A DNA stretch of 63,646 bases, the filler included, from Octopus bimaculoides (Eukaryota): the NCBI RefSeq assembly GCF_001194135.2. It is 4 parts of 3 records of this genome, joined end to end, with 100 filler letters (N's around TTAATTAATTAA, not from the genome) between each part and the next. Parts side by side here need not be neighbours in the genome. Positions count along the whole stretch, not along the records: positions 1 to 28,549 come from NC_068985.1; 3 more parts are not named here. One strand, given 5' to 3'. The notes under the pieces are model-generated. The model was given only the letters and a program-made list of their open reading frames with translations. It was not told the origin of the DNA and did not search any database. Position numbers and translations under genes: made by a program. Shown here in pieces: positions 330 through 27,993 of this stretch. Within the stretch, counting starts at the first letter, position 1, and each line of letters opens with the position of its first letter.

Positions 330-3300
330 GGATGTAGTTAAAGGGGTAGATGGAGCTCCTAAGTTTAATAAAGCCGTGGAGAAGGCGATCTGTCTAGGAG
401 AAGGTAACTCCGAATTCAAATCCTTTACTCCTGTCTTGCAGTTAGCCTTTAGTTGGGCAAAGACTGGGAGAAGGACACTCTGATATAAAACCACTGGAGA
501 GGTTAAACTCCGGGATAATAAAACATGCGACCTCCATAATGAGCCAGTCATCTTGCCTTGGTTTGTCACTGGATATCATATTTTGGGGGGAGGAGTGGAT
601 GCTGTACGTGTCATACAAGCGTGTGGCATTGATATTTAAATGTACAGATATCTCTTCAAGTCCCACGGCGATGGAATAGTGGTGACATGTGCAGGCTTAA
701 CGGGAGCGCATAGTTACGAATCGGCACGTGGGCGGCTCAAGGCCCATATAACGTCGCTGCATTGTTGAAAGAACAGCAGCATGCTTCGGTGAGGTCGAGA
801 GCGTCTGAGCAGCCCTCTCCAGGGTAGCACTGCTCACTCAGAAATCCGGAAAAGGTCTAGGAAATGTTACTCAAACAAATGCCTGTTCTACCATCAAGCT
901 GGTTAGCAACCTGAAGCTGACGGTTCTTCACTACAGCAGGAGGAATGCAAATAGAAAACATACAAACAAGAAATATAGATTATGGGTAGGTGTATGGAAT
1001 GTCAGGACATTTCTTGATCATAAAGGACATTTCTTGATCATAAAGGGTCAAGTAACCCTGAACGGCGAACTGGAATAATAGCCATGGAGTTGGCTCGGTA
1101 TAACATTGACACTGCTACACTCTCTGAAAGTGATGAAGACCAATTGACAGAAACAGGTGCTGGATACACTTTCTATTGAAAGGGTAAACCAAAGGGTGAA
1201 AAACGAGTAGGGGGTGTTGGATTTGCCATTCGTACCGAGCTAACCCACAAAATAGAACAGCCTAATGGTTTCAGTGATAGGATTATGTATCTTCGAGCTC
1301 CTCTATCATGCAATCGTTTTAGGACTCATTTCTGTTTATGTTCCTACTCTTGATAGCAGCAGTAAATCTATTATGGCTTTCTATGATGATTTCAGATTGG
1401 TTATTATTTCGATTCCAAACGCAGATAAGATCCTCCTTCTTGGCGATTTCAACGCCCGGGTTGGATGCGATTATGGGACCTGGGATGCACTAGGGAGACA
1501 TGGTTTGGGAAAAAAGGAACGTTAATGGTCTCCGTCTTCTTCAGCTCTACACTGAACTTGATCTTATCATCTGCAACACTGTTTTCATCAGGATATCCAT
1601 AAATCTACCTGGACGTACCCAAGATCCAAACACAGGCATATTCTCGATTACCTTATCACTAGGAAACGAGACCGTCCAGATGTTTGCACTGTCTGAGTCA
1701 TGTGTAGTGCAGAATGTGGGACTGACCATATGCTCAAACGCGATAAATTGAAACTCCGCATCATGCGTAGAATAAGATCTGGAGGAATAAAAGTCCCTAA
1801 ACGTATTGATGTGTTGACATTAAGAGACTCTAAGGTGCAGGCGAATCTTAGAAATGCTATTGGAGAAGCGGAATTTGATGGAACTTAGGCTCAGTTTAAG
1901 ACCACTATTTACAATGTTGGAGTTGAGGTTCTTGGTCTCAGAAACAGAAAACATCGGGACTGGTATGATGAAAATGATCTACAGATCAATAAACTTCTTG
2001 AAGATAAAAATAAGTTGCATAAAAAATGCCTCGGTGCCCCAGATGAGGATAGAAAGCCCTTACTGCAGTCTCTCAAAAGGATAAAATCATCACTCCAAAG
2101 AAAGATACGACAAATGAAAAACAAATGGTGGTCGGATATTTCTGAAAAAAATCCAGAAAGCGTATAATAGTAAAGACTTGAAAACAGTATATCACTTGAT
2201 CGAACATGTGTTTGGTCCTCAGTCTTCATTTGTGGTACCACTCAAGTCTAAAGACAGCTGCTTTCTCTTCAAGGATCATGAGGGTATCATGAAACGTTGT
2301 ATTGAGCACTTCACTGATCTCTTTTATAATCCTTCAGTTATTGATGAAGATGTCATCAGTAATCTACCCCAAAAGGATATCATTCATGAGATGATGGAAC
2401 ATCCAACTATAGATGAGATCAAAAAGACAATCAAAGGATTAAATACTGGGAGGGCACCAGGTTTTGACGGTATTCCTGTTGAAATTCTCCTCCACAGGGA
2501 TAATAGTTAAACAAGGTGATATTGCTGCTCCAACACTTTTTTCCATATATTTTGCTGTAACCATCTTGTACGCTTTCCAAGACTGTGACATCGGCGTCTA
2601 TATTCGCTTCAGAACCACAGCTAAGGTCTTTGATGTTAAACGCTTTAATGCAAAGTCGAAATCATTCCAGTCTCTTGTTCAAGAGCTCCTTTAAGCTGAT
2701 GATGTAGTTCTCGTTGCTCACACCGAGGAGGACATGCAGGCTATACTGGATCTCTTCTCTAGAGCTTGTATTGCTTTTGGACTTACCATCAGTCTAAAGA
2801 AAACAAAGATCACGTCCTCTCAGCTACCAAGCCAACCTTATTTGGAACCTAATATCTTCGTTCAGAGTAAAATTAGATGTGGCTGATTTGTTCATCTACC
2901 TTGGCAGGACTCTCTCTAGAGAAATAAATCTGAGATAATTCTGAAATAAATCTGAGAACTGAAAAGCCAGCAGAGCATTTGGAAGGCTTTGACATCGTGT
3001 GTGGTCTTATAGAAGTATCACCTTCAAAACCAAGCTTAGTATCTATGAATCCTGCATTTTAACGGTCCTCCTATACTCTTCTGAGACCTAGACGACATAT
3101 CGGCGCCACATCAAGGCTTTAGAAAGGCTCCATCAGACTTGCCTAAGGAGGATACTAAACATCAAATGGAAGTTTTTAACACCAGATACCGTTGTTCTTC
3201 AGCAAGCTAACTCATCCGGTATTGAAATGATCCTCATACGCAATCAAATGTGTTGAGTTAGGCATCTTGCTAGAATGCAGGATGACAGGTTGCCAAAGCA

Positions 3301-3512
3301 GTTGTTTTACGGGGAGTTGCAGCGTGGCAAACGTCCGAGACATAAACCCAAGAAACGTTTTAGGAATGCTGTCAGAAGCAACCTTAAGGCTCTTAATGTG
3401 AAAGTTGAAGACTGGGAGCATATGACGCAAGATCGATCGGTTTGGAAACAAATGATCTACAACAGATGTGAAGCATTTGAAGTTCGAAGAATTGACTATC
3501 ACGCGGTAAATT
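330..3512 (+). mobile_element. Decayed RTE-clade LINE (5'UTR, APE endonuclease, RT), internally deleted and 3'-truncated
   Basis: Fragments WNVRT..PERRTGIIAMELARYNID, GVGFAIRT, LLLGDFNARVG, GRAPGFDGIPVE, KQGDIAAPTLFSIYF, ADDVVL, MQDDRLPKQLFYGELQRGKR. Many stops and frameshifts. RT middle is missing at ~2504 (GIPVEILLH joins directly to VKQG). The 5'UTR has a duplicated CTRGGAGAAGG..ACTCYGA motif. Confidence 0.9.
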
Positions 3513-8707: not shown

Positions 8708-8915
8708 CGTGTGTATTTATATATATNNNNNNNNNNNNNNNNNNNNNNNNNNNNNNNNNNNNNNNNNNNNNNNNNNNNNNNNNNNNNNNNNNNNNNNNNN
8801 NNNNNNNNNNNNNNNNNNNNNNNNNNNNNNNNNNNNNNNNNNNNNNNNNNNNNNNNNNNNNNNNNNNNNNNNNNNNNNNNNNNNNNNNNNNNNNNNNNNN
8901 NNNNNNNNNNNNNNN

Positions 8916-11045: not shown

Positions 11046-11120
<75 letters not shown>

Positions 11121-13381
11121 AGGAGGGGACAGAAAGTGAGTGAGTGAAAGAGGAGACAGAGAGTGAGAAAGAGAGAGAGAAAGCTGTTCTCGAAATTTTA
11201 TAAATATGTGCGAGAGAGAGTGTGCATATATATACAAGCATGTATACACGCGTACACACACACACATATATAACTATATATGCTTGTATGTATGCCTGTT
11301 TGTATGTATGCATGTATGTATGTGTGTATGTATGCATGTATGTATGATGTATGTATATAAATAAATGTATCCACACGCATATATATATATAGTTTCGAGA
11401 ACAAAGAAAATGTCTGAACGTGTATTTCCATTTATTATTAGACGAAGAAAATGCTTCACATTTCAGCAGAAATTATCTAAGATACTAATATTGCTTATAT
11501 TTTCATATCTATTTGCTAGTCGGTTTTTTTCTTCAAACTTTTCTGGGAATATAGGATGGACGGAAGGTAACTCAAAACTTTGTCTTCATATAATAAGATT
11601 ACTATTTGTTTCAACTCTATTTTAGTTTGACTTGTCATTAAGACAAAGTAAATAAAATATAACTAGTTAAAAAGAAATCTGGCATGTTGTTTGGTTCATA
11701 GGATATACTTTAAAAAGAAAAAGAAACTCCAAAACAACTAAAATAATGCAACAGTAAATAAAAGATAAAATTCGACTGTCAGGTTTGTCGTCAGAAATAA
11801 TTATGTTAATTAAACTGTTTTGGAAGTTATTTGAGATTTTATCTGATGATGCACTTAATGACAATTAATTGGAAAAAAAATCTTGCAATTTCGCTTAGTT
11901 AACTGCAGAAAATAGAACAAGACTTGACTATACATATCTTTACAGAGGAAATTAGAAAAGTCAACAGCAAGAACCAAACGGGACTAAACTGAGTCATAGA
12001 GTTACACAAACACTTGCGCGCGTACACACACACATACACAATTTATATATATAAATATATATATAATATACATATGTAATTTGTGTATGTGTGTGTGTAT
12101 GTGTGTGTGTCTGTGTGTGTGCATTAGAACTGAGGTTTATACCATTGTTCGAGTTTCACATTCTGTGATCTTTCGTGCAGACTGAGACTCGGATAGAGGA
12201 CAGAACGTTCCAGATTTTACTTAAGTTCTAAATAATAAATAAGTCAAATAATCAAGTAATTTTTTCTTGGCCCCTTATTCAGTCATGGTTGATTTTATTT
12301 CTATTTAATTAGAAAATCCCACAGGGCTTTTGGCTTGTAGCTAAAATAAAAGAATCTTGTTCCAGATTATAACTGTCTCTCAAATAAAACGTTTCAAGTT
12401 CGTAAACATTTAACCGTTGCTCAAAAGATAATTATTGTGCCTACAATGTTATTAACCAAATCTACCAATGTTAAAGCTACCCTCGTGTTTAGTTGTTAAA
12501 AATAACAGTGAGATTAATAGGTAACCATTATTATAAAGCTGGTGAACACAAAATATTTTTAAAAAACAAAGGAGTGCACTATGATTATATGATGTATATT
12601 CACAATGATAAAGGGAAAGAGTGTGTGAAAGGTGTATAAGTTATTACTTTCATTTTTAAGTTAACATTCTGTTCGATAAAATATGATAATTTCCTTTGAA
12701 TTTTAATTTACATTCGACTCTTGCTCCGTATAAAAGGAAACAAAACCAATTAGTTTGTTTTGTTATATTCGTATCTTTCTCAGTCATATTCTGTATACTG
12801 ATGGTCTTTTTTTTTTCATTTTAAAACAAAGGCGTTAAAGCTCTGTAAATCACAACTCTACGTTCGGTGTTGGATCAAACTTCTTTTGTTTTGTTTTTAA
12901 TCAGTGCGTAATCAATTTTTTCATTGTATTCGCAACTAAATGTCAAAGCTTGTAAATATTTATGAAGTCGCTTTCTCGAAGTCATGGTTATTACATATCA
13001 TACTACTTACCATAGATTCATGCAGAGTTAGTTATTTCACCCAAGTCAGTAATCAAAATGATAATATACTCAACATACAGAAAAATAGTTATTAAACGTG
13101 TATATAAAAAGAATAGAAATATAACAAATAAAACAACAGTTTTTTCTTTTCCTCTTTTTGTGTTTCGTTTTTGAATTTTTTTTTTATTATTTCAACGTGA
13201 GCGGCGTCGGACACCAACCTCATATCTTAACTTGCCAGCTTCAAGTCAACTCTCTTCTTTCTTTGCTGTTGTGTTGAATGGTACCTTCCTCAGAAAGCTG
13301 CGATCATATGAAAAATCTTCTTTACTGCTGGGGGATTATAACCTGAAAAGATATCCAACCATTTTAGCAGTATGAATTCTA

Positions 13382-14243: not shown

Positions 14244-15563
14244 TATCTTAAAAAGGAATTTATACGAATATATATATATTTTATCTAACTCTTCTTCTTG
14301 CGACATTATAATTTTTTTTTTAATGTATAAATTATTGTTACAAAGTTAAAATCTTTGTCCTTCTCTTAACACAGCATTCTGCCTATGGCGAAACTGATGA
14401 CCTTCAATAGCTAAGGGAAAGACAAATTTTTTTATGTTACAGAAAAAAATTGATAATATTCACCACCTATTACATTATATTACACTATATTCACCACTTA
14501 TTACAGAATACTTTCCTCAAACAGAAACGATGTTATTTCAAACGGCTTTTCCGAATTCTTTCTAATGTACTTTAAAACAGACACTTGCTCAAGAGGCCAC
14601 GCTGATAAATAGATAGATAGATAGATAGATGGATAGATAGATAGATAGATAGATAGATGGATGGATGGCAAGAAAGTAGGAGGAAGGGATTTGGATGGAT
14701 GGATGGCAAGAAAGTAGGAGGAAGGGATTTGGATGGATGGATGGATGGATGGAACGATTTGGTTGAACGAACACTGAACAATTTGGTTGGGAAGCAAGCG
14801 TCTTATAACACAGCCACTCCTGTGCATATNNNNNNNNNNNNNNNNNNNNNNNNNNNNNNNNNNNNNNNNNNNNNNNNNNNNNNNNNNNNNNNNNNNNNNN
14901 NNNNNNNNNNNNNNNNNNNNNNNNNNNNNNNNNNNNNNNNNNNNNNNNNNNNNNNNNNNNNNNNNNNNNNNNNNNNNNNNNNNNNNNNNNNNNNNNNNNN
15001 NNNNNNNNNNNNNNNNNNNNNNNNNNNNNNNNNNNNNNNNNNNNNNNNNNNNNNNNNNNNNNNNNNNNNNNNNNNNNNNNNNNNNNNNNNNNNNNNNNNN
15101 NNNNNNNNNNNNNNNNNNNNNNNNNNNNNNNNNNNNNNNNNNNNNNNNNNNNNNNNNNNNNNNNNNNNNNNNNNNNNNNNNNNNNNNNNNNNNNNNNNNN
15201 NNNNNNNNNNNNNNNNNNNNNNNNNNNNNNNNNNNNNNNNNNNNNNNNNNNNNNNNNNNNNNNNNNNNNNNNNNNNNNNNNNNNNNNNNNNNNNNNNNNN
15301 NNNNNNNNNNNNNNNNNNNNNNNNNNNNNNNNNNNNNNNNNNNNNNNNNNNNNNNNNNNNNNNNNNNNNNNNNNNNNNNNNNNNNNNNNNNNNNNNNNNN
15401 NNNNNNNNNNNNNNNNNNNNNNNNNNNNNNNNNNNNNNNNNNNNNNNNNNNNNNNNNNNNNNNNNNNNNNNNNNNNNNNNNNNNNNNNNNNNNNNNNNNN
15501 NNNNNNNNNNNNNNNNNNNNNNNNNNNNNNNNNNNNNNNNNNNNNNNNNNNNNNNNNNNNNNN

Positions 15564-20419: not shown

Positions 20420-21028
20420 TCTTTTCATCTGTTTCAGTCATTTGACTGCAGCCATGCTGGAGCACCGCCTTTAGTCGAACAAACCAGCCAAGACTTATTC
20501 CTTGTAAGCTTAGTACTTATCTTATCGGTCTCTTTTGCTGAACCGCTAAGTTACGGGGACGTAAACANNNNNNNNNNNNNNNNNNNNNNNNNNNNNNNNN
20601 NNNNNNNNNNNNNNNNNNNNNNNNNNNNNNNNNNNNNNNNNNNNNNNNNNNNNNNNNNNNNNNNNNNNNNNNNNNNNNNNNNNNNNNNNNNNNNNNNNNN
20701 NNNNNNNNNNNNNNNNNNNNNNNNNNNNNNNNNNNNNNNNNNNNNNNNNNNNNNNNNNNNNNNNNNNNNNNNNNNNNNNNNNNNNNNNNNNNNNNNNNNN
20801 NNNNNNNNNNNNNNNNNNNNNNNNNNNNNNNNNNNNNNNNNNNNNNNNNNNNNNNNNNATATATATACATACGACGGGCTTCTTTCAGTTTCCGTCTACA
20901 AAATCCATTCACAAGACTTTGCTCAGCCCGAGGCTATAGTGGAAGACACTTACCCAAGGTGCCACGCAGTGGGACTGAACCCAGAACCATGTGGTTGATA
21001 AGCAAGCTACTCACCACACAGCCATGCC
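20420..21028 (-). mobile_element. SINE family A, full form: tRNA-like head (20871-21028), internal microsatellite/gap, conserved tail (20420-20567)
   Basis: Head GGCATGGCTGTGTGG (A box)...GGTTCAGTCCC (B box). Tail GACTAAAGGCGGTGCTCCAGCATGGCTGCAGTCAAATGACTGAAAC is shared with other copies. Confidence 0.8.
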
Positions 21029-22140
21029 TATACCTGTATATATATGTATATATGCACATACATACACACAAAGACACGCACACATACACACGAACACATA
21101 CACGCATGTCAGAAATTATAATAAACACTAGTTTATATAAATCGTTCCCGATATACGTTTCACCGTTGTGGTTGTTTGGAAACTTTGCATTTCTGCATTG
21201 AATATTTCAAGTGCAATCGTAACTTTCAACACGGCCGTAGCAGCCATGCACGTAACTGAACAGATAAGATATACTAGACTAAACTAAACTACATACATAC
21301 ATTTGTAATATGTATATATTTAGTCATATAAATGCAAATATATATATACACACCTATGTTCATAAAATATATATACACACATACATATATATCTGTGTGT
21401 GTATAAATCTATTACATATATTTATATATGTGGATATATAAATATATATATATACCCAAATATAATATACTATATATTTATACATACATATATATATATA
21501 TGTACTTGTGTGTGTGTGTGTATATATATATATATGTATGTATATATGTATATATGTATATATGTATCTATGTATGTATGAATGTATACACATAGATACA
21601 TACATACATACATACATACAAATATATATANNNNNNNNNNNNNNNNNNNNNNNNNNNNNNNNNNNNNNNNATATATATATATATGCGTATATGTGTGTTT
21701 ATGCTGTATTTCTGTAATATGCGATTAGAATATTTTCCCACATTCTCATATGTAGTTTGTGGTCAAGTGTAAATAATAATCTTTTCCGTGTAAAAATCGA
21801 TATTGAAATATTCGAAAATTGGTGCCGGTGTATATGTGATCTACATAAATGTTTCTGGTATAGCTTGTGATCTACATTAATTCAAATGGCATAGTTTGTG
21901 ATCTACACCGACTTCTTGATCTACATTTAAAATTCATCTATCTGTTCGAAATGCAAGCATTTCAACCTCATTAAGATTTCATTTGTTGGGAGATTTTAAG
22001 ACCAAATGAGTAAAATTTCTTTATTGCATTTTTAAATGATATCCGTGTTGTATACAAATAGTCATAGTATTCATAGTACTCTCGTAATCTGTTTGCATCA
22101 CCATAATTAAATATATGTGTGTGTGTACCAGTATTATTGG

Positions 22141-22625: not shown

Positions 22626-24134
22626 AAGGCATATATCTTACGTTTGTAAAGTTGTCAAGCATTTCCTGCTACTATGATGGTCATAACATATATAGCTATT
22701 CATTATGAAACATTTCTAACATGTGAGTTCTTGAACTGAACTATGAACTTTTAAATATTTTGATATCGACTTTTGTAAAGAAAACATTTAGCAAATACGG
22801 TCAGCGCTGAACCAGCAACGGCTGAGGAGAATTCGGAGTTGATGTTTAGAAATACCATACTATGGAATGTACGGTTTATGACATATTGCTCACACACGCA
22901 CGCACGCACACACACACACACACACACACTCACACACACACACACACATACACATCAGTGTGTGTATATACATACATGCGTATACATACATACAGAGAGA
23001 GAGAGAGAGAGACAAACAGAGAGAAAGAGAGAGACAGACAAACAGAAATTAATTTTTGCAAGGAAAATAATAACATGCCTTCGAAGTTTCAGCTAGCCGC
23101 CTGTCATCTAGAAGCTACTTATGTATTTAGTTTATTGTCATTCTTCAGGTTAATGTCAGATTGTTTTTATATATAAATTCTCGTTACAACAAACCTATAT
23201 ANNNNNNNNNNNNNNNNNNNNNNNNNNNNNNNNNNNNNNNNNNNNNNNNNNNNNNNNNNNNNNNNNNNNNNNNNNNNNNNNNNNNNNNNNNNNNNNNNNN
23301 NNNNNNNNNNNNNNNNNNNNNNNNNNNNNNNNNNNNNNNNNNNNNNNNNNNNNNNNNNNNNNNNNNNNNNNNNNNNNNNNNNNNNNNNNNNNNNNNNNNN
23401 NNNNNNNNNNNNNNNNNNNNNNNNNNNNNNNNNNNNNNNNNNNNNNNNNNNNNNNNNNNNNNNNNNNNNNNNNNNNNNNNNNNNNNNNNNNNNNNNNNNN
23501 NNNNNNNNNNNNNNNNNNNNNNNNNNNNNNNNNNNNNNNNNNNNNNNNNNNNNNNNNNNNNNNNNNNNNNNNNNNNNNNNNNNNNNNNNNNNNNNNNNNN
23601 NNNNNNNNNNNNNNNNNNNNNNNNNNNNNNNNNNNNNNNNNNNNNNNNNNNNNNNNNNNNNNNNNNNNNNNNNNNNNNNNNNNNNNNNNNNNNNNNNNNN
23701 NNNNNNNNNNNNNNNNNNNNNNNNNNNNNNNNNNNNNNNNNNNNNNNNNNNNNNNNNNNNNNNNNNNNNNNNNNNNNNNNNNNNNNNNNNNNNNNNNNNN
23801 NNNNNNNNNNNNNNNNNNNNNNNNNNNNNNNNNNNNNNNNNNNNNNNNNNNNNNNNNNNNNNNNNNNNNNNNNNNNNNNNNNNNNNNNNNNNNNNNNNNN
23901 TATATATATATATATATATATTGTTGTACTTGGGGATGGTTATATTGCCAGTTTAGCCAATAAAAACACACGCACTGTATATTTGGTGTTAATTTGCTTC
24001 AGCTTTATATTACATTAGTCTTAATATATATACGTATGTATGTATGTTATGTATGTATGTATGGTTTTATTCATAAACTGGTACATATACATATGCGTGC
24101 ATATATATATGCATATTGAAATAGAATAACGTGT

Positions 24135-24143: not shown

Positions 24144-27100
24144 TTAAAGAGGAAGAACCAATATGCTGGAATCTTTCTGTGTCATAATAATTGTGTTTTG
24201 TCGAAGTGTTATAGCCAGTGGACCTTTGATTCCATCCTTGGCAGTGAATAATTCACAATCAAGTTTACCATCTTTAGTTAGTCGATATATTTTATTTGTT
24301 TCAGTATCAGCAATGTATATGTATCCATCTGGGCTATATTCTATATCACGCGGTGTTATGAATTTATTACTTTGAATCGGTCTAAATTCGAAGTTAATTT
24401 CGCCTTCTTTGGGTATACCAAGTAGGTATGTGCCACAACTGTCGGATACGTAAATCACATCGTTGTCACCGATTGTAATGTACTGTGGGAAGATGAAAAA
24501 ATCGAGTCCCACTTTGTTGTATTGGAGAGTGCGCAAAGGTTGTCCTGTATTCGAGAGAAGATCTATGCCTAGAATGCACGAACAGACCAGGTTTTGATCC
24601 CGTGTCACAGCAATACCCCAGTAACACTGTTCGGTTGAGACTAAACCGACAACGACAAGTCGAGCGCCATGAGACAAAAATGCTAGTTGCCTAGCATTGG
24701 GGATAGTGCAAGCCACCACATTTGCATCCATCAAAGCCAAACTCCATGGGCCAGATTTAAATGTTACTCGATCGCCAGGAAGGCCAACGGTCGAGAACAT
24801 TTGAACACAGCAATTGCTCCAGTCGCTAACGATATATTGTCCATTATCATTGCATTTTATGTCTGCAAGCCAGCTACGGAAATGTTGGTCAGCTTGGAAA
24901 GGACCTCCAGCATAAAGTGTTCCTTTTTTATGGGTGGTATGTAAATAATCCAACTCGCCTTCAACAAAGGTGCCAACACTCGTATCACGTTTCTTATTCC
25001 TTTTAACTGTCTCAATCGATGGTAATTTGGGTGGAGATTCTTTTGGTGCCATCCCTATTTGAACTTGACTATTTTCCGCTGAACTTTCTTCTTTGATTTC
25101 CACATGTCGATTACGCTTGCTTTTAGAATCATTGTCCAATTTTAAAGCACCTTTTAATATTTTCCCGGCTTTATTTGATACAAGGGTTGCTTTATCTCGT
25201 GTAGGGCGTTCTGGAAGTGGAGATGATGATATTTCTGACGTCACATAGCGATCTGTATTTGCCTGCCATTCCTTCGTGCTATTACCTTCGTCTAAATCCA
25301 CTGATGATGTTGCCTGGTCGGAATAGATGTCAAAGTCAAATCTCTTGGCTACAGAGCTAAGTGTGCCATATGAATCATCTGTATTGGATATATCCGTAGC
25401 TTCACTGGTTTCACTTAAAGACGTATTGAGATTATCTGCAGTTGATAACTGTTCCTTAATATCAATTTCCCATTCTGTCATTTCAGATTCAGGACTCATT
25501 GGAGCAACTCGGCTTGATATTGGAGAAGCATTGATTTGGGATCTGTTTTGGTGTTCAATGACGGGTTTCTCTACTTCTTCAAGAGAATTTGAAGTTTTCT
25601 TCAATGACACACTTCTTGCAGGGCTGATGTCCCCATTCATTTGCCGAAATTTCCTTTCATGGGCATAGGACTGCAAATCGGGATCAGATTTCTGATTTTC
25701 ATTCTGGTCAGTTGATCGACGAAATTTCCCTTTCTTTGGAGATTTGATTTTTGAATTATTATTTTCTCTCGGGGATATGACTTGATCACTCTGGTCATAA
25801 TCATCGTCGTTAACCTTTACTTTTGAACTGGTGTTGCGGGTTTCTGTAGAATAACTTTGGTGTATATTTCCCACTTTTGTTCGTTTTCTGTTTCTAGGGT
25901 TCAATTCGGTTTCATATTGGTCACTATCATCTGACTTGTCGGTTTCAGGTTTCGGATATTTAAATCCATACTCGGAACTGATGTTATGAGAGTTGTATCG
26001 AAAAGACTTTGAATCTGACTCATGTTTTCGTTGCTGCCAGGCACTAGGACTTTGGAGAATTCTTGGGCTAGGACTGAAGAATCCACTGTCATTTCCTGGG
26101 GTTTGAACTGTTTGCTCATCCTCTGTCGGACTTGGTATTTCTTGGTGGTCTTGATACTGGTACTGTTGGCTGCGACGATCATTTTTCAAGTTTATTTTTT
26201 GCAGATGTGGGCAATATGTTTTAGTGTCAGTTGAATTTAAAGGATGCACTCTAGATTCCTTAGAATGACTGTTTGTCTGAATAGGTGTTGATGAATTTTG
26301 AAGTGATATAGTTTCTGTTAAGGAAATTTGGCTCGAGTCGTTTTTTTTACAGTTTAGTTTCATAGGAGGTGGTGTATCAGCTTTGCTGTATGAAATTCTG
26401 TGCTCTGTGCTCGATAATTTTCTTTTGGATCCATAACTTGGAACCCAATATTTTAGAGTTTCTTCAATTAAATTTGCTATGGTAGCTTTTAAAGATTCGA
26501 TCTCTTCTTCCAAACGTTCTCTAGAATACAATTCATCTTCTCCGCATTTAAGCACTTCCTCAAACTTGGAGTCCATTTTATTCTGGAGCAATTCTCCAAC
26601 ACCTTCGCCGAGGAGCGATTCATCTTGGTATCTTGCAAAAGAATTCCGATGACAAGAAACATTAGAATTAAATCGTGTATTATTATTGGCATGTTTCACT
26701 TTATGGTAAGATTTACATAACCAAGGATTCGAATATTCCGGTGAGTGGCATACGTGGTTCGGAATATACCGAGATTGACTATAGCATATGTGATTGTTGG
26801 TATTGTTTCGGTGGTTTTCTGTAGTTTCATCCAGAATTTTTGCTGATTTCCTTTGACAATATCCATTTGATGTTCTGTGTTTATATTTAACGTTTTTTCC
26901 TGTGTGATTAGATTGAAAAAAACTGTCATTACCTTCAAAGCTCTTGTTGTCGCTTGGTTGGTCACTCTTTTCACTGTATCTATTTGTTAGCAATGAATTG
27001 TCTTCCAGTGAGGTGGACAATTGTTCAACATCTGATGAAGCTGGTGAGGAGGTTTCGGCGCGAGTACTGTCACAAGATGGTGGTTTATTGGAAACGGAGT

Positions 27101-27512
27101 TCGCTTCGTTACAGTGCCGGCAATACTCAGCTCCGAAATGGGACGAGTTAGGAATGGTATAAAGTGGTGGCCGTCCATCGAGACTATCACCATTTCCAAT
27201 AACATTGTATCTCTCTAACACGTTCACCAAGAAGATACTCTCACAGCGATTGTTTCCTTTTCTTAATCCATCGGATTTTAGAAGCAAAGTTTCAAAGGCG
27301 CCCACTTCAAGTCTACAATGAGGACAAGGTATATATTTTCTACCGGATCCCAAAACAGAAAACATGGTGCCTTCGAAGGAAAAATCCTCGCTACCGCTGC
27401 TGCTGCTGCCGCCATCACCACATCCGCCATAGTAAGGTGGTGGTGGAGAGTCCATTAAAGTCCCATATCTTTGGTGTGAATTACTATAACAACAGTGCAG
27501 ACCAGCCTCCAT
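24144..27512 (-). CDS. 1122-aa TRIM-NHL-like protein: N-terminal CxxC remnants, coiled coil (~aa 307-354), long Ser/Thr/Asp/Glu/Lys-rich disordered region, C-terminal six-bladed NHL/beta-propeller (~aa 882-1122)
   Basis: Uninterrupted 3.37-kb ORF in otherwise stop-rich DNA. ATG in good context (aaagtATGG) with an in-frame TAA two codons upstream. Six NHL-like blades: LADIKCNDNGQYIVSDWSNCCVQMF, PWSLALMDANVVACT, YWGIAVTRDQNLVCS, PQYITIGDNDVIYVSD, PRDIEYSPDGYIYIADTETNKIYRLTKDG, PLAITLRQNTIIMT. Family assignment is by pattern recognition only. Confidence 0.85.
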   Translation of the reverse strand: MEAGLHCCYSNSHQRYGTLMDSPPPPYYGGCGDGGSSSSGSEDFSFEGTMFSVLGSGRKYIPCPHCRLEVGAFETLLLKSDGLRKGNNRCESIFLVNVLERYNVIGNGDSLDGRPPLYTIPNSSHFGAEYCRHCNEANSVSNKPPSCDSTRAETSSPASSDVEQLSTSLEDNSLLTNRYSEKSDQPSDNKSFEGNDSFFQSNHTGKNVKYKHRTSNGYCQRKSAKILDETTENHRNNTNNHICYSQSRYIPNHVCHSPEYSNPWLCKSYHKVKHANNNTRFNSNVSCHRNSFARYQDESLLGEGVGELLQNKMDSKFEEVLKCGEDELYSRERLEEEIESLKATIANLIEETLKYWVPSYGSKRKLSSTEHRISYSKADTPPPMKLNCKKNDSSQISLTETISLQNSSTPIQTNSHSKESRVHPLNSTDTKTYCPHLQKINLKNDRRSQQYQYQDHQEIPSPTEDEQTVQTPGNDSGFFSPSPRILQSPSAWQQRKHESDSKSFRYNSHNISSEYGFKYPKPETDKSDDSDQYETELNPRNRKRTKVGNIHQSYSTETRNTSSKVKVNDDDYDQSDQVISPRENNNSKIKSPKKGKFRRSTDQNENQKSDPDLQSYAHERKFRQMNGDISPARSVSLKKTSNSLEEVEKPVIEHQNRSQINASPISSRVAPMSPESEMTEWEIDIKEQLSTADNLNTSLSETSEATDISNTDDSYGTLSSVAKRFDFDIYSDQATSSVDLDEGNSTKEWQANTDRYVTSEISSSPLPERPTRDKATLVSNKAGKILKGALKLDNDSKSKRNRHVEIKEESSAENSQVQIGMAPKESPPKLPSIETVKRNKKRDTSVGTFVEGELDYLHTTHKKGTLYAGGPFQADQHFRSWLADIKCNDNGQYIVSDWSNCCVQMFSTVGLPGDRVTFKSGPWSLALMDANVVACTIPNARQLAFLSHGARLVVVGLVSTEQCYWGIAVTRDQNLVCSCILGIDLLSNTGQPLRTLQYNKVGLDFFIFPQYITIGDNDVIYVSDSCGTYLLGIPKEGEINFEFRPIQSNKFITPRDIEYSPDGYIYIADTETNKIYRLTKDGKLDCELFTAKDGIKGPLAITLRQNTIIMTQKDSSILVLPL

Positions 27513-27756
27513 ACTTTAGCGCCGGCCTGGTGGATATGTTACCGTTGCAAATGTTATTGTTGTGAATGTTGGTTACTGTTGATGTTGTAGTGGTCGTCGT
27601 ATTGATGTGAACAGCAGTAGCAGTTATTGACAGCAATGATGTGTTTTGTTGTTTTTCGTTTTTGTTTTACATTTGTTCTGCCTGTTGCTGGTGTTATACC
27701 TGCTGTTCTACTTGCTGTTATGTTTCAGCCTGTTATAGCAGTAGCAGCCGTTTCAC

Positions 27757-27840
27757 CTGTCGAATGGAAAGACAGAATATGAAATAGAGCTAGAGGCACA
27801 GGTACAGGTAGAAAGAGAGAGAGAGAGGAGGGGGGATAAA
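27757..27840 (-). promoter_or_regulatory. 3' splice site (polypyrimidine tract + CAG) opening the large coding exon at 27756
   Basis: Minus strand reads ...ctctctttctacctgtacctgtgcctctagctctatttcatattctgtctttccattcgacag|GTGAAAC, 244 nt upstream of the ATG. Confidence 0.6.
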
Positions 27841-27993
27841 TAGAAACAGAAATAGAGACACGGATAGAGAGGTGGGAAAGAAGGAGTTCAAAGCGGTTGT
27901 AAGTGAACACAATGATAATATGGTGGTTGGCGGTTGGTAGTAGTGAGAGTAGGCATAAAAGTATGGCAACAAGTGGCAAAAGTAGAAGTGGTA

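What the first reader, a model, noticed from the sequence alone, without database searches (positions are those of the whole stretch)
24144..27512. TRIM-NHL-like protein with a dismantled RING/B-box and a ~500-aa disordered insert
Seen: a six-bladed NHL-like propeller at the C-terminus and a coiled coil at aa ~307-354. The N-terminus has only YIPCPHCR (C63/C66, resembling the last RING knuckle plus the ..FLVNVLE helix that follows TRIM RINGs) and EYCRHC (C131/C134, resembling a B-box start). An in-frame stop 2 codons before the ATG means no upstream coding exon supplies the missing RING half in this frame. Established: TRIM-NHL proteins (Brat, LIN-41/TRIM71, TRIM2/3) use NHL for RNA or protein binding; Brat lacks a RING. 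Inference: a lineage-specific, E3-dead scaffold or RNA regulator in which the two CxxC pairs may form a new single zinc site.
Basis: partly seen in the sequence, partly recalled or inferred. Interest (0 to 1): 0.7.

Follow-up and report, generated by a model that had tools for sequence, protein, structure and literature searches.

The report
Cephalopod-only NHL propeller protein without RING
This is a real, selectively constrained octopus gene found only in cephalopods that joins a TRIM-type NHL beta-propeller to a long disordered linker and an orphan four-cysteine N-terminal module, but nothing shows that this module is the remains of a RING or B-box.

Summary
The 1122-aa ORF (24144-27512, minus strand, Octopus bimaculoides chr CM046605.1) is real. 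Orthologues exist in O. sinensis, O. vulgaris, Argonauta hians and two more divergent, presumably cephalopod, assemblies. It is under purifying selection: dN/dS is 0.26 overall, 0.09 in the NHL domain and 0.07 in aa 1-43.

The C-terminus (aa ~865-1122) models as a six-bladed propeller. Its 23 best PDB matches are all TRIM-NHL domains (Thin, Mei-P26, TRIM71, Brat, TRIM2/3), with TM 0.70-0.77.

The start codon is secure. An in-frame TAA sits exactly two codons upstream in all three species with DNA. No RING- or B-box-like coding piece lies within 10 kb upstream in the two orthologous loci with unmasked upstream DNA.

The "dismantled RING/B-box" reading is not supported. Pfam, PDB profile searches and a profile search of 1.84 billion proteins find no RING, B-box or any non-cephalopod relative of aa 1-386. 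The "coiled coil" is short and poorly conserved.

The conserved features are C63, C66, C131, C134 and C147, two PY motifs (PPPY, PPLY/LPQY), and a DSGxxS island in the linker.

My best reading is a non-catalytic adaptor whose propeller binds a partner. The PY and degron motifs would connect it to ubiquitin ligases in trans; this step is inferred, not shown.

The parts
24144..27512 (-). Complete coding sequence, 1122 aa plus stop, in a single coding exon
   Evidence: ORF list. Identical to the gene called on O. bimaculoides CM046605.1. Orthologues are 1106-1123 aa. dN/dS against Argonauta is 0.26.
27516..27518 (-). In-frame TAA two codons upstream of the ATG; it fixes the start codon
   Evidence: The same position holds in Argonauta (L003) and the distant orthologue (L002).
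27757..27920 (-). Polypyrimidine tract ending in ...cgacAG. Predicted 3' splice acceptor of a 5'-UTR intron about 245 nt upstream of the ATG, followed by a CA-rich, G-poor leader
   Evidence: Sequence. A C+T tract of about 82-88% at -300 to -500 is found in all three species. This is a prediction only; no transcript data were available.
27432..27446 (-). PY motif 1, PPPPY (aa 23-27), within the invariant MDSPPPPY
   Evidence: Invariant in Octopus, Argonauta and P0010. aa 1-43 have dN/dS 0.07. Two PP.Y motifs are reached in 0.6% of shuffles.
27072..27383 (-). Orphan conserved N-terminal module (aa 44-147) with invariant C63, H65, C66, C131, H133, C134 and C147; putative single Zn(Cys)4 site
   Evidence: Alignments. 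dN/dS 0.23. No hit in Pfam, PDB or outside cephalopods. The AF2 model is unusable, pLDDT 45.
27315..27326 (-). First CxxC knuckle, CPHC (C63/C66)
   Evidence: The only outside similarity is to a zinc-ribbon repeat of a Reticulomyxa protein.
27159..27170 (-). PY motif 2, PPLY (aa 115-118); LPQY in Argonauta
27111..27122 (-). Second CxxC knuckle, CRHC (C131/C134), within the invariant FGAEYCRHCN
26997..27068 (-). Conserved Ser/acidic stretch STRAETSS..SDVEQ.S.SL.DN (aa 149-172)
   Evidence: Invariant columns in the three-clade alignment.
26442..26594 (-).
   Evidence: It carries the highest 3.5-periodic hydrophobic moment in the protein, but only z about 2.6. It is poorly conserved and is interrupted by P/G in the distant orthologue.
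24933..26987 (-). Polar, low-complexity, presumably disordered linker (aa 176-860) with short conserved islands
   Evidence: Composition and sliding identity. dN/dS 0.41 for aa 361-860. Three-clade alignment.
26070..26105 (-). Conserved island QTPGNDSGFFSP (aa 470-481) containing a DSGxxS phosphodegron-like motif
   Evidence: QTPxNDSG[FI][FL]SP is conserved in Octopus, Argonauta and L002 within an otherwise weakly conserved linker. aa 464-560 have dN/dS 0.18.
24147..24920 (-). Six-bladed NHL beta-propeller (aa 865-1122)
   Evidence: Pfam NHL. AF2 pTM 0.78. Foldseek top 23 hits are TRIM-NHL domains. Profile against PDB: TRIM3/TRIM2 1e-8, Thin 1e-7, TRIM71 1e-6. dN/dS 0.087.
24066..24071 (-). 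AATAAA candidate polyadenylation signal 75 nt after the stop codon
   Evidence: sequence only.

Best explanation
This is a cephalopod-restricted gene with a single coding exon. It encodes a non-catalytic adaptor or scaffold built from four parts:
1. An N-terminal tail with two PY motifs.
2. An orphan module of about 100 aa whose four invariant cysteines (C63, C66, C131, C134) probably hold one structural zinc ion.
3. A polar, disordered linker of about 690 aa carrying a few conserved short motifs, including a DSGxxS phosphodegron-like site.
4. A six-bladed NHL propeller of the TRIM-NHL structural type.

Shown: the gene is real, its start is fixed, its architecture is conserved and under purifying selection, the propeller fold holds, and no RING or B-box is present.

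Inferred: the propeller is the partner-binding platform, more likely for protein than RNA given its acidic composition. The protein has no RING of its own. It would connect to the ubiquitin system in trans through WW-domain (NEDD4-type HECT) ligases that bind the PY motifs, and through SCF-betaTrCP-type recognition of the phosphorylated DSGxxS site. It would act either as an adaptor delivering propeller-bound cargo or as a regulated target itself. The N-terminal module is treated as a lineage-specific zinc module, not as a RING or B-box remnant.
For: - Real gene with conserved architecture: orthologues of 1104-1123 aa in O. sinensis, O. vulgaris and Argonauta. The same layout (N-terminal module, linker, NHL) is on one stretch of DNA in a distant assembly, L002.
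- Purifying selection in every region: 0.07 for aa 1-43, 0.23 for the Cys module, 0.41 for the linker, 0.087 for the NHL domain.
- Start fixed by a TAA at -6 in three species. No RING- or B-box-like coding piece lies in 10 kb upstream of L002 or L003.
- Propeller.
- No RING, B-box or other known domain in aa 1-184. No relative of aa 1-386 outside cephalopods among 1.84e9 representative proteins.
- Invariant C63/C66/C131/C134/C147, MDSPPPPY and PPLY/LPQY. The conserved QTPxNDSGxxSP island.
- Motif counts against shuffles.
- Propeller pI is 5.0-5.5 in four orthologues.
Against: - No binding, zinc or expression data exist.
- PY and DSGxxS are short motifs. Their function is inferred only from conservation and from established knowledge of WW-domain and beta-TrCP recognition.
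- The N-terminal structure could not be predicted (pLDDT 45), so a zinc site is unproven.
- The alignment is shallow (Neff about 1.3), so a very remote relationship to a known zinc domain cannot be excluded.
- The best structural matches of the propeller include RNA-binding NHL domains (Brat, Mei-P26, TRIM71). Overall pI does not rule out a basic RNA-binding pocket.
- The published record says NHL surfaces evolve fast and cannot be read from family membership (PMC5908797).
Confidence: 0.5

Rival explanations
1. Eroded TRIM-NHL. The protein descends from a RING/B-box/coiled-coil/NHL ancestor whose zinc fingers decayed to two CxxC knuckles. It now acts like RING-less Brat, as an RNA-binding translational regulator through the NHL top surface.
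For: - The propeller's 23 best PDB matches are all TRIM-NHL domains.
- Among eukaryotic solved structures, the best profile matches are TRIM3/TRIM2, Thin and TRIM71.
- A short amphipathic helical segment lies between the N-terminal module and the linker.
- CPHCR followed by ...IFLVNVLE loosely recalls, from memory, the end of TRIM RINGs.
Against: - No RING or B-box hit at E<=10 in Pfam for the full protein or for four N-termini.
- No PDB hit at E<=10 with the N-terminal profile or with aa 50-110. The only RING chain listed, at E 6.5, is not significant.
- Only C63, H65, C66, C131, H133, C134 and C147 are conserved. The 64-residue gap fits neither a RING nor a B-box.
- The helical segment is no longer than about 33-58 aa, poorly conserved and broken by P/G in the distant orthologue.
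- No filamin domain was found.
- The propeller is acidic, pI about 5.
Confidence: 0.2
2. The N-terminal module is a very divergent beta-tent-type zinc domain (Yippee/Mis18/cereblon-CULT-like). In those domains two CxxC knuckles about 50-65 residues apart clamp one zinc between two beta-sheets. The protein would then be a ligand- or partner-binding domain fused to an NHL propeller.
For: - The spacing C63-x2-C66-x64-C131-x2-C134 matches the layout recalled from memory for that fold.
- The low-confidence AF2 model predicts only beta-strands for aa 50-98.
- YPEL5 itself detects no other beta-tent family in the PDB by phmmer, so sequence searches are weak tests here.
Against: - hhalign of the cephalopod N-terminal profile against human YPEL5 gives probability 0.4%, E 0.14, and only a knuckle-to-knuckle local match.
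- No Yippee, Mis18, CULT or MsrB hit in Pfam or the PDB.
- Foldseek of the poor model finds nothing.
- The sequence after the second knuckle is polar and low-complexity, where beta-tent domains have further strands.
Confidence: 0.1
3. Artefact: a chance or decaying ORF, or a mis-annotated start that hides upstream coding exons.
For: - The gene sits in repeat-rich, gap-ridden sequence.
- The two distant orthologous contigs each carry one frameshift.
- No transcript data could be consulted.
Against: - A 1122-aa open frame is conserved in length and order in at least four species.
- dN/dS is 0.07-0.41 in all regions.
- The ATG is conserved, the TAA at -6 is conserved, and protein conservation starts at M1.
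- O. sinensis RefSeq lists four accessions with the same 1123-aa protein.
- The frameshifts in L001 and L002 lie at different places. Whether they are real or assembly errors is undecided.
Confidence: 0.03

Closest known systems
Drosophila Brat (RING-less TRIM-NHL) and other TRIM-NHL proteins (TRIM2, TRIM3, TRIM71/LIN-41, Mei-P26, Thin)
   Same: A C-terminal six-bladed NHL propeller, with TM 0.70-0.77 to these structures. Like Brat, it has no RING.
   Different: Brat keeps two B-boxes and a long coiled coil; this protein has neither. NHL sequence identity is only 16-20%. A linker of about 690 aa replaces the compact RBCC-(filamin) region. The propeller is acidic, whereas LIN41 uses a strongly basic pocket (PMC5908797).
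NHLRC1/malin and TRIM32 (RING plus NHL E3 ligases encoded by a single coding exon; from general knowledge)
   Same: An NHL propeller at the C-terminus and a coding sequence in one exon.
   Different: Both have a canonical RING and are E3 ligases in their own right. No sequence relationship to the N-terminus here was detected.
PY-motif adaptors of NEDD4-family ligases (Ndfip1/2, alpha-arrestins/ARRDCs, LITAF; from general knowledge)
   Same: Two conserved (P/L)PxY motifs next to a partner-binding domain. LITAF also combines PY motifs with two separated CxxC knuckles.
   Different: No homology was found, including no zf-LITAF-like hit at E<=10. There is no hydrophobic membrane anchor between the knuckles. 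WW-domain binding is untested.
Beta-tent zinc domains (Yippee/Mis18, cereblon CULT)
   Same: Two CxxC pairs separated by about 50-65 residues, presumably binding one zinc (spacing recalled from memory).
   Different: No profile similarity to YPEL5. No Pfam or PDB hit. The strands after the second knuckle appear to be missing.

Membership tests
TRIM / RBCC (including TRIM-NHL, class VII) | N-terminal RING finger (eight Cys/His ligands in a cross-brace); dispensable in RING-less members such as Brat | tested here: not met
   No RING family at E<=10 in Pfam. No PDB hit with the N-terminal profile. Only 7 conserved Cys/His, in a pattern unlike a RING. No RING-like piece in 10 kb upstream of the orthologues.
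TRIM / RBCC (including TRIM-NHL, class VII) | At least one B-box zinc finger | tested here: not met
   No zf-B_box hit at E<=10. After C131-x2-C134-x12-C147 there are no further conserved Cys or His. PDB phmmer with aa 114-173 gave only non-significant hits.
TRIM / RBCC (including TRIM-NHL, class VII) | Long coiled coil (on the order of 100 residues) after the B-box | tested here: inconclusive
   Only a heptad-like segment of 17+33 aa in Octopus, z about 2.6. It is weakly conserved and broken by P/G in the distant orthologue. No dedicated coiled-coil predictor or confident structure was available.
NHL-repeat six-bladed beta-propeller (Pfam PF01436) | NHL repeats forming a six-bladed propeller | tested here: met
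   PF01436 scores 28.6 bits against a cutoff of 20. AF2 gives 6 blades of 4 strands, pTM 0.78. Foldseek E about 1e-12 to TRIM-NHL propellers over about 260 columns. Profile against PDB gives TRIM3/TRIM2 at 1e-8.
RNA-binding NHL domains (Brat, LIN41/TRIM71 type) | Basic RNA-binding top surface or pocket with the family's contact residues | tested here: inconclusive
   Whole-domain pI is 5.0-5.5, with K+R 21-24 against D+E 26-27 in four orthologues. This argues against a basic domain but not against a local pocket. Contact residues are not conserved even between known subfamilies (PMC5908797).
Beta-tent zinc domains (Yippee/Mis18/CULT) | Profile similarity to the family plus two CxxC knuckles about 50-65 residues apart | tested here: not met
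   The spacing fits, but hhalign against YPEL5 gives probability 0.4%. No Pfam or PDB hit. The test is weak because the alignment has Neff 1.3.
LITAF/SIMPLE-like domain | CxxC, a hydrophobic membrane-inserted stretch, then HxCxxC, preceded by PY motifs | tested here: not met
   No zf-LITAF-like hit at E<=10. The inter-knuckle sequence is not a hydrophobic anchor.
PY-motif clients or adaptors of NEDD4-type HECT ligases | Accessible (P/L)PxY motif(s) that bind WW domains | not testable with these tools
   The motifs are present and conserved: PPPY aa 24-27 is invariant, and PPLY/LPQY lies at aa 115-118. Binding is untested.
SCF-betaTrCP substrates | A DSGxxS degron that is phosphorylated and bound by beta-TrCP | not testable with these tools
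   DSGFFS in Octopus and DSGILS in L002, inside a conserved island. Phosphorylation and binding are untested.

The most novel reading that the evidence does not exclude
Coleoid cephalopods evolved a new ubiquitin-system adaptor. A TRIM-type NHL propeller has lost or never had its own RING. It instead carries a new one-zinc Cys4 fold (or a hyper-divergent Yippee/CULT-like beta-tent) plus PY motifs that borrow HECT ligases in trans. This would be an 'outsourced-E3' version of the TRIM-NHL design, specific to cephalopods.
Probability: 0.12. Interest if true: 0.55.

Novelty: new variant of a known kind. Interest (0 to 1): 0.3.

Why it matters
NHL propellers are well known, and this one is annotated only as 'hypothetical' or, misleadingly, 'GATA zinc finger domain-containing protein 14-like'. 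Its value is modest. It is a strongly constrained, apparently cephalopod-specific gene that joins a TRIM-type propeller to an N-terminal module with no detectable relatives anywhere else. If the module proves to be a new zinc fold, or if the PY motifs really recruit HECT ligases, it would show how a TRIM-NHL-like function can be rebuilt without a RING. It would also add a candidate to the short list of lineage-specific cephalopod regulators. If not, it is one more uncharacterised NHL-repeat protein.

Tried and rejected
1. Pfam on the whole protein and on four N-termini at E<=10 gave only NHL plus sub-threshold propeller families and generic zinc-knuckle noise (DUF7577, Fin, C2H2). There was no RING, B-box, LITAF or Yippee hit.
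2. PDB sequence and profile searches with the N-terminus (aa 1-184, 50-110, 114-173) gave nothing significant. The best hit was an archaeal RNA polymerase E'' zinc ribbon at E 0.41.
3. A profile search of 1.84e9 representative proteins with aa 1-386 found only cephalopod orthologues. The one exception was a Reticulomyxa protein with five zinc-ribbon repeats matching aa 48-77, judged a knuckle-level, non-homologous match.
4. AF2 of aa 1-184 gave pLDDT 45, and its Foldseek search gave no hit below E 0.68. Both are unusable.
5. The Yippee/beta-tent lead was tested by hhalign against YPEL5 and gave probability 0.4%.
6. A search for upstream RING or B-box exons by regex and by Cys/His-rich ORF pieces, in 10 kb upstream of L002 and L003, found only microsatellite translations. 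The O. bimaculoides upstream beyond the window is masked with N in L004.
7. Word-indexed homologue searches with the NHL domain or profile found only bacterial-type NHL proteins and a few filamin-NHL fragments, at weak E-values. No close paralogue and no non-cephalopod orthologue turned up.
8. Literature searches found nothing on this gene.
9. Nuclear-localisation-like basic runs (RNRKRTK, KKGKFRR) are conserved in octopods but not in L002, so they were not used.


Full report
**What is there.**
The window carries a 1122-aa ORF on the minus strand, 24144..27512. Its DNA is identical to a gene called on Octopus bimaculoides chromosome CM046605.1, assembly GCA_001194135.2. The rest of the window is AT-rich and full of microsatellites. 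It has five assembly gaps and a decayed LINE-like element, and no other convincing gene.

**Is the gene real, and where does it start?**
Near-identical proteins are annotated in two other octopuses:
- O. sinensis, 1123 aa, with four RefSeq accessions sharing one protein.
- O. vulgaris, 1104 aa, modelled from M20.

A 68%-identical, 1106-aa protein is annotated in Argonauta hians. All carry the uninformative name 'GATA zinc finger domain-containing protein 14-like' or 'hypothetical'.

A profile of aa 1-386 was searched against 1.84 billion representative proteins. It found one further relative, P0010 (E 1.7e-61). Its 36.7-kb ENA contig (L002) carries the whole architecture on one stretch of DNA. 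That stretch is split by a single frameshift into 397-aa and 833-aa ORFs. A Logan contig (L001) holds the C-terminal half of a related species. I presume, but cannot show, that both come from cephalopods.

In O. bimaculoides, Argonauta and L002, an in-frame TAA lies exactly two codons upstream of the ATG. Protein conservation begins at M1. About 245 nt upstream of the ATG there is a long pyrimidine tract ending in cgacAG. All three species have a comparable tract. So the coding exon probably starts there, preceded by 5'-UTR intron(s). Any upstream exon read in the CDS frame would hit the TAA.

No RING- or B-box-like coding piece exists in the 10 kb upstream of L002 or L003. The only Cys-rich pieces there are translated TG/CA microsatellites.

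Nei-Gojobori dN/dS between O. bimaculoides and Argonauta:

| Region | dN/dS |
|---|---|
| Whole CDS | 0.26 |
| aa 1-43 | 0.07 |
| aa 44-175 | 0.23 |
| aa 301-360 | 0.34 |
| aa 361-860 | 0.41 |
| aa 464-560 | 0.18 |
| Propeller (aa 861-1122) | 0.087 |

The ORF is therefore a functional protein-coding gene with a secure start. The first two were checked and not met; transcription could not be tested, though purifying selection argues for a functional gene.

**The C-terminus.**
- Pfam finds NHL at 28.6 bits against a cutoff of 20.
- An AF2 model of aa 845-1122 has pLDDT 73 and pTM 0.78. It shows 24 strands in six four-stranded blades, with an N-terminal strand closing the last blade.
- Foldseek against the PDB puts 23 TRIM-NHL propellers first: Thin, Mei-P26, TRIM71/LIN41, Brat, TRIM2 and TRIM3. 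E-values are about 1e-12 to 4e-11, TM 0.70-0.77, over about 260 aligned columns at 16-20% identity. Virginiamycin B lyase and designer propellers follow.
- A four-species profile scores TRIM3/TRIM2 at 1e-8, Thin at 1e-7 and TRIM71 at 1e-6.
- Searches of 5.8 billion proteins find no closer relative than the cephalopod orthologues.

The propeller claim is confirmed, and 'TRIM-NHL-type' is a fair structural description. The domain is acidic in all four orthologues, pI 5.0-5.5. Published work shows that LIN41 binds RNA through a strongly basic pocket. The same work shows that NHL surfaces differ sharply even between related subfamilies (PMC5908797). RNA binding can therefore be neither assumed nor excluded.

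**The N-terminus.**
The sequence facts are right: CPHC lies at C63/C66 and CRHC at C131/C134. Across Octopus, Argonauta and P0010 the invariant potential zinc ligands are C63, H65, C66, C131, H133, C134 and C147. C7, C8, C31 and C90 are not conserved.

Nothing links this module to a RING or B-box:
- Pfam gives no RING or B-box family at E<=10, either for the full protein or for four N-termini.
- The N-terminal profile has no PDB hit at E<=10.
- aa 50-110 has none either.
- aa 114-173 gives only an archaeal zinc ribbon at E 0.41 and one RING chain at E 6.5. Both are noise.
- The only non-cephalopod hit in the 1.84-billion-protein search is a Reticulomyxa protein. Its five CPKC-x13-CWEC zinc-ribbon repeats match aa 48-77. 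That is knuckle-level similarity only.
- AF2 could not fold aa 1-184 (pLDDT 45), and its Foldseek search was empty.

I also followed a lead from memory. The C-x2-C-x64-C-x2-C layout recalls beta-tent domains (Yippee/Mis18/CULT). hhalign against human YPEL5, whose sequence was verified against PDB 8qbn, gave probability 0.4%. The module is therefore an orphan with four invariant cysteines. One Zn(Cys)4 site is plausible and untested.

**The 'coiled coil'.**
aa 311-345 carry the highest 3.5-residue hydrophobic periodicity in the protein, but only z about 2.6 against shuffles. P/G-free runs are 17+33 aa in Octopus, 58 aa in Argonauta and 16+17 aa in the distant orthologue. Argonauta has a 4-residue indel there, and identity is 42-55%. 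This is a short amphipathic helical segment. It is not demonstrably a TRIM-type coiled coil.

- The N-terminal tail contains an invariant MDSPPPPY. aa 1-43 have dN/dS 0.07.
- A second PY motif lies at aa 115-118: PPLY in Octopus and P0010, LPQY in Argonauta.
- Two PPxY motifs arise in 0.6% of shuffles.
- The linker is otherwise weakly conserved across the three clades, but it holds the island QTPxNDSG[FI][FL]SP. This contains a DSGxxS motif. A second island, SFR[YH]NS, follows shortly after.

From established knowledge, (P/L)PxY motifs bind WW domains of NEDD4-type HECT ligases. Phosphorylated DSGxxS is the beta-TrCP degron.

**Most likely mechanism.**
The protein is a non-catalytic adaptor or scaffold. 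The propeller binds a partner. The disordered linker carries regulatory short motifs. The N-terminus combines a small zinc-stabilised module with PY motifs that would recruit HECT ligases in trans. The architecture, its conservation and the absence of a RING or B-box are shown. The zinc site, WW-domain and beta-TrCP binding, and the nature of the propeller's ligand are inferred.

The rivals are erosion from a true TRIM-NHL with Brat-like RNA regulation (0.2), a hyper-divergent beta-tent module (0.1) and artefact (0.03).

**Comparison with known families, and verdict.**
It works like a RING-less TRIM-NHL protein only in having the same kind of propeller. It fails the membership tests for TRIM: RING and B-box are not met, and the coiled coil is inconclusive. 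It is a member of the NHL-repeat propeller superfamily with a new, apparently cephalopod-restricted N-terminal module. I rate it a new variant of a known kind, of modest interest (0.3). The finding's headline, a dismantled RING/B-box, is not supported.

Noticed in passing
window 27513-27920 (-); L003 and L002 9500-10000: The 5' flank has a conserved layout in three species. A pyrimidine tract of about 82-88% C+T lies 300-500 nt upstream of the ATG. It is followed by an A/C-rich, G-poor leader and a TAA exactly at -6. This looks like a 5'-UTR intron acceptor plus an unstructured leader.
   Followed up: partly
window 1256-3511 (+): A decayed LINE-like retroelement. ORF pieces carry ...LLLGDFNARVG... 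(Exo_endo_phos E 0.009 and Endonuclease-reverse transcriptase E 0.026, both below Pfam cutoffs), ...GRAPGFDGIPVEILL..., and a basic C-terminal piece. All are interrupted by stops.
   Followed up: partly
window 8727-8915, 14830-15563, 20568-20858, 21631-21670, 23202-23900: Five runs of N (assembly gaps). The gaps inspected are flanked by TA/TG/CA microsatellites. The last gap begins about 245 bp after the gene's stop codon, so the 3' UTR may be incomplete in the assembly.
   Followed up: no
L002 about 11100-11194; L001 about 700-936: Each of the two distant orthologous contigs has one frameshift inside the gene, at different positions. No homopolymer is visible at the L002 site. Whether these are assembly errors or real changes is undecided.
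   Followed up: partly
P0011 (Reticulomyxa filosa ETO35544.1): A foraminiferan protein with five tandem repeats of about 60 aa, each holding a CP[Kx]C-x13-C[WQ]xC zinc ribbon. It was the only non-cephalopod hit to aa 48-77 (E 3.3e-5, summed over the repeats).
   Followed up: partly
P0003/P0002 names; P0004: The RefSeq and GenBank name 'GATA zinc finger domain-containing protein 14-like' is a low-complexity artefact; no GATA finger was found by Pfam. The O. vulgaris model starts at M20 instead of the conserved M1.
   Followed up: yes
window 26997-27068 (-), aa 149-172: The Ser/acidic stretch STRAETSS..SDVEQ.S.SL.DN directly after the Cys module is almost invariant across all clades. It could be a phosphorylation cluster or a binding motif. 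No known motif was assigned.
   Followed up: no
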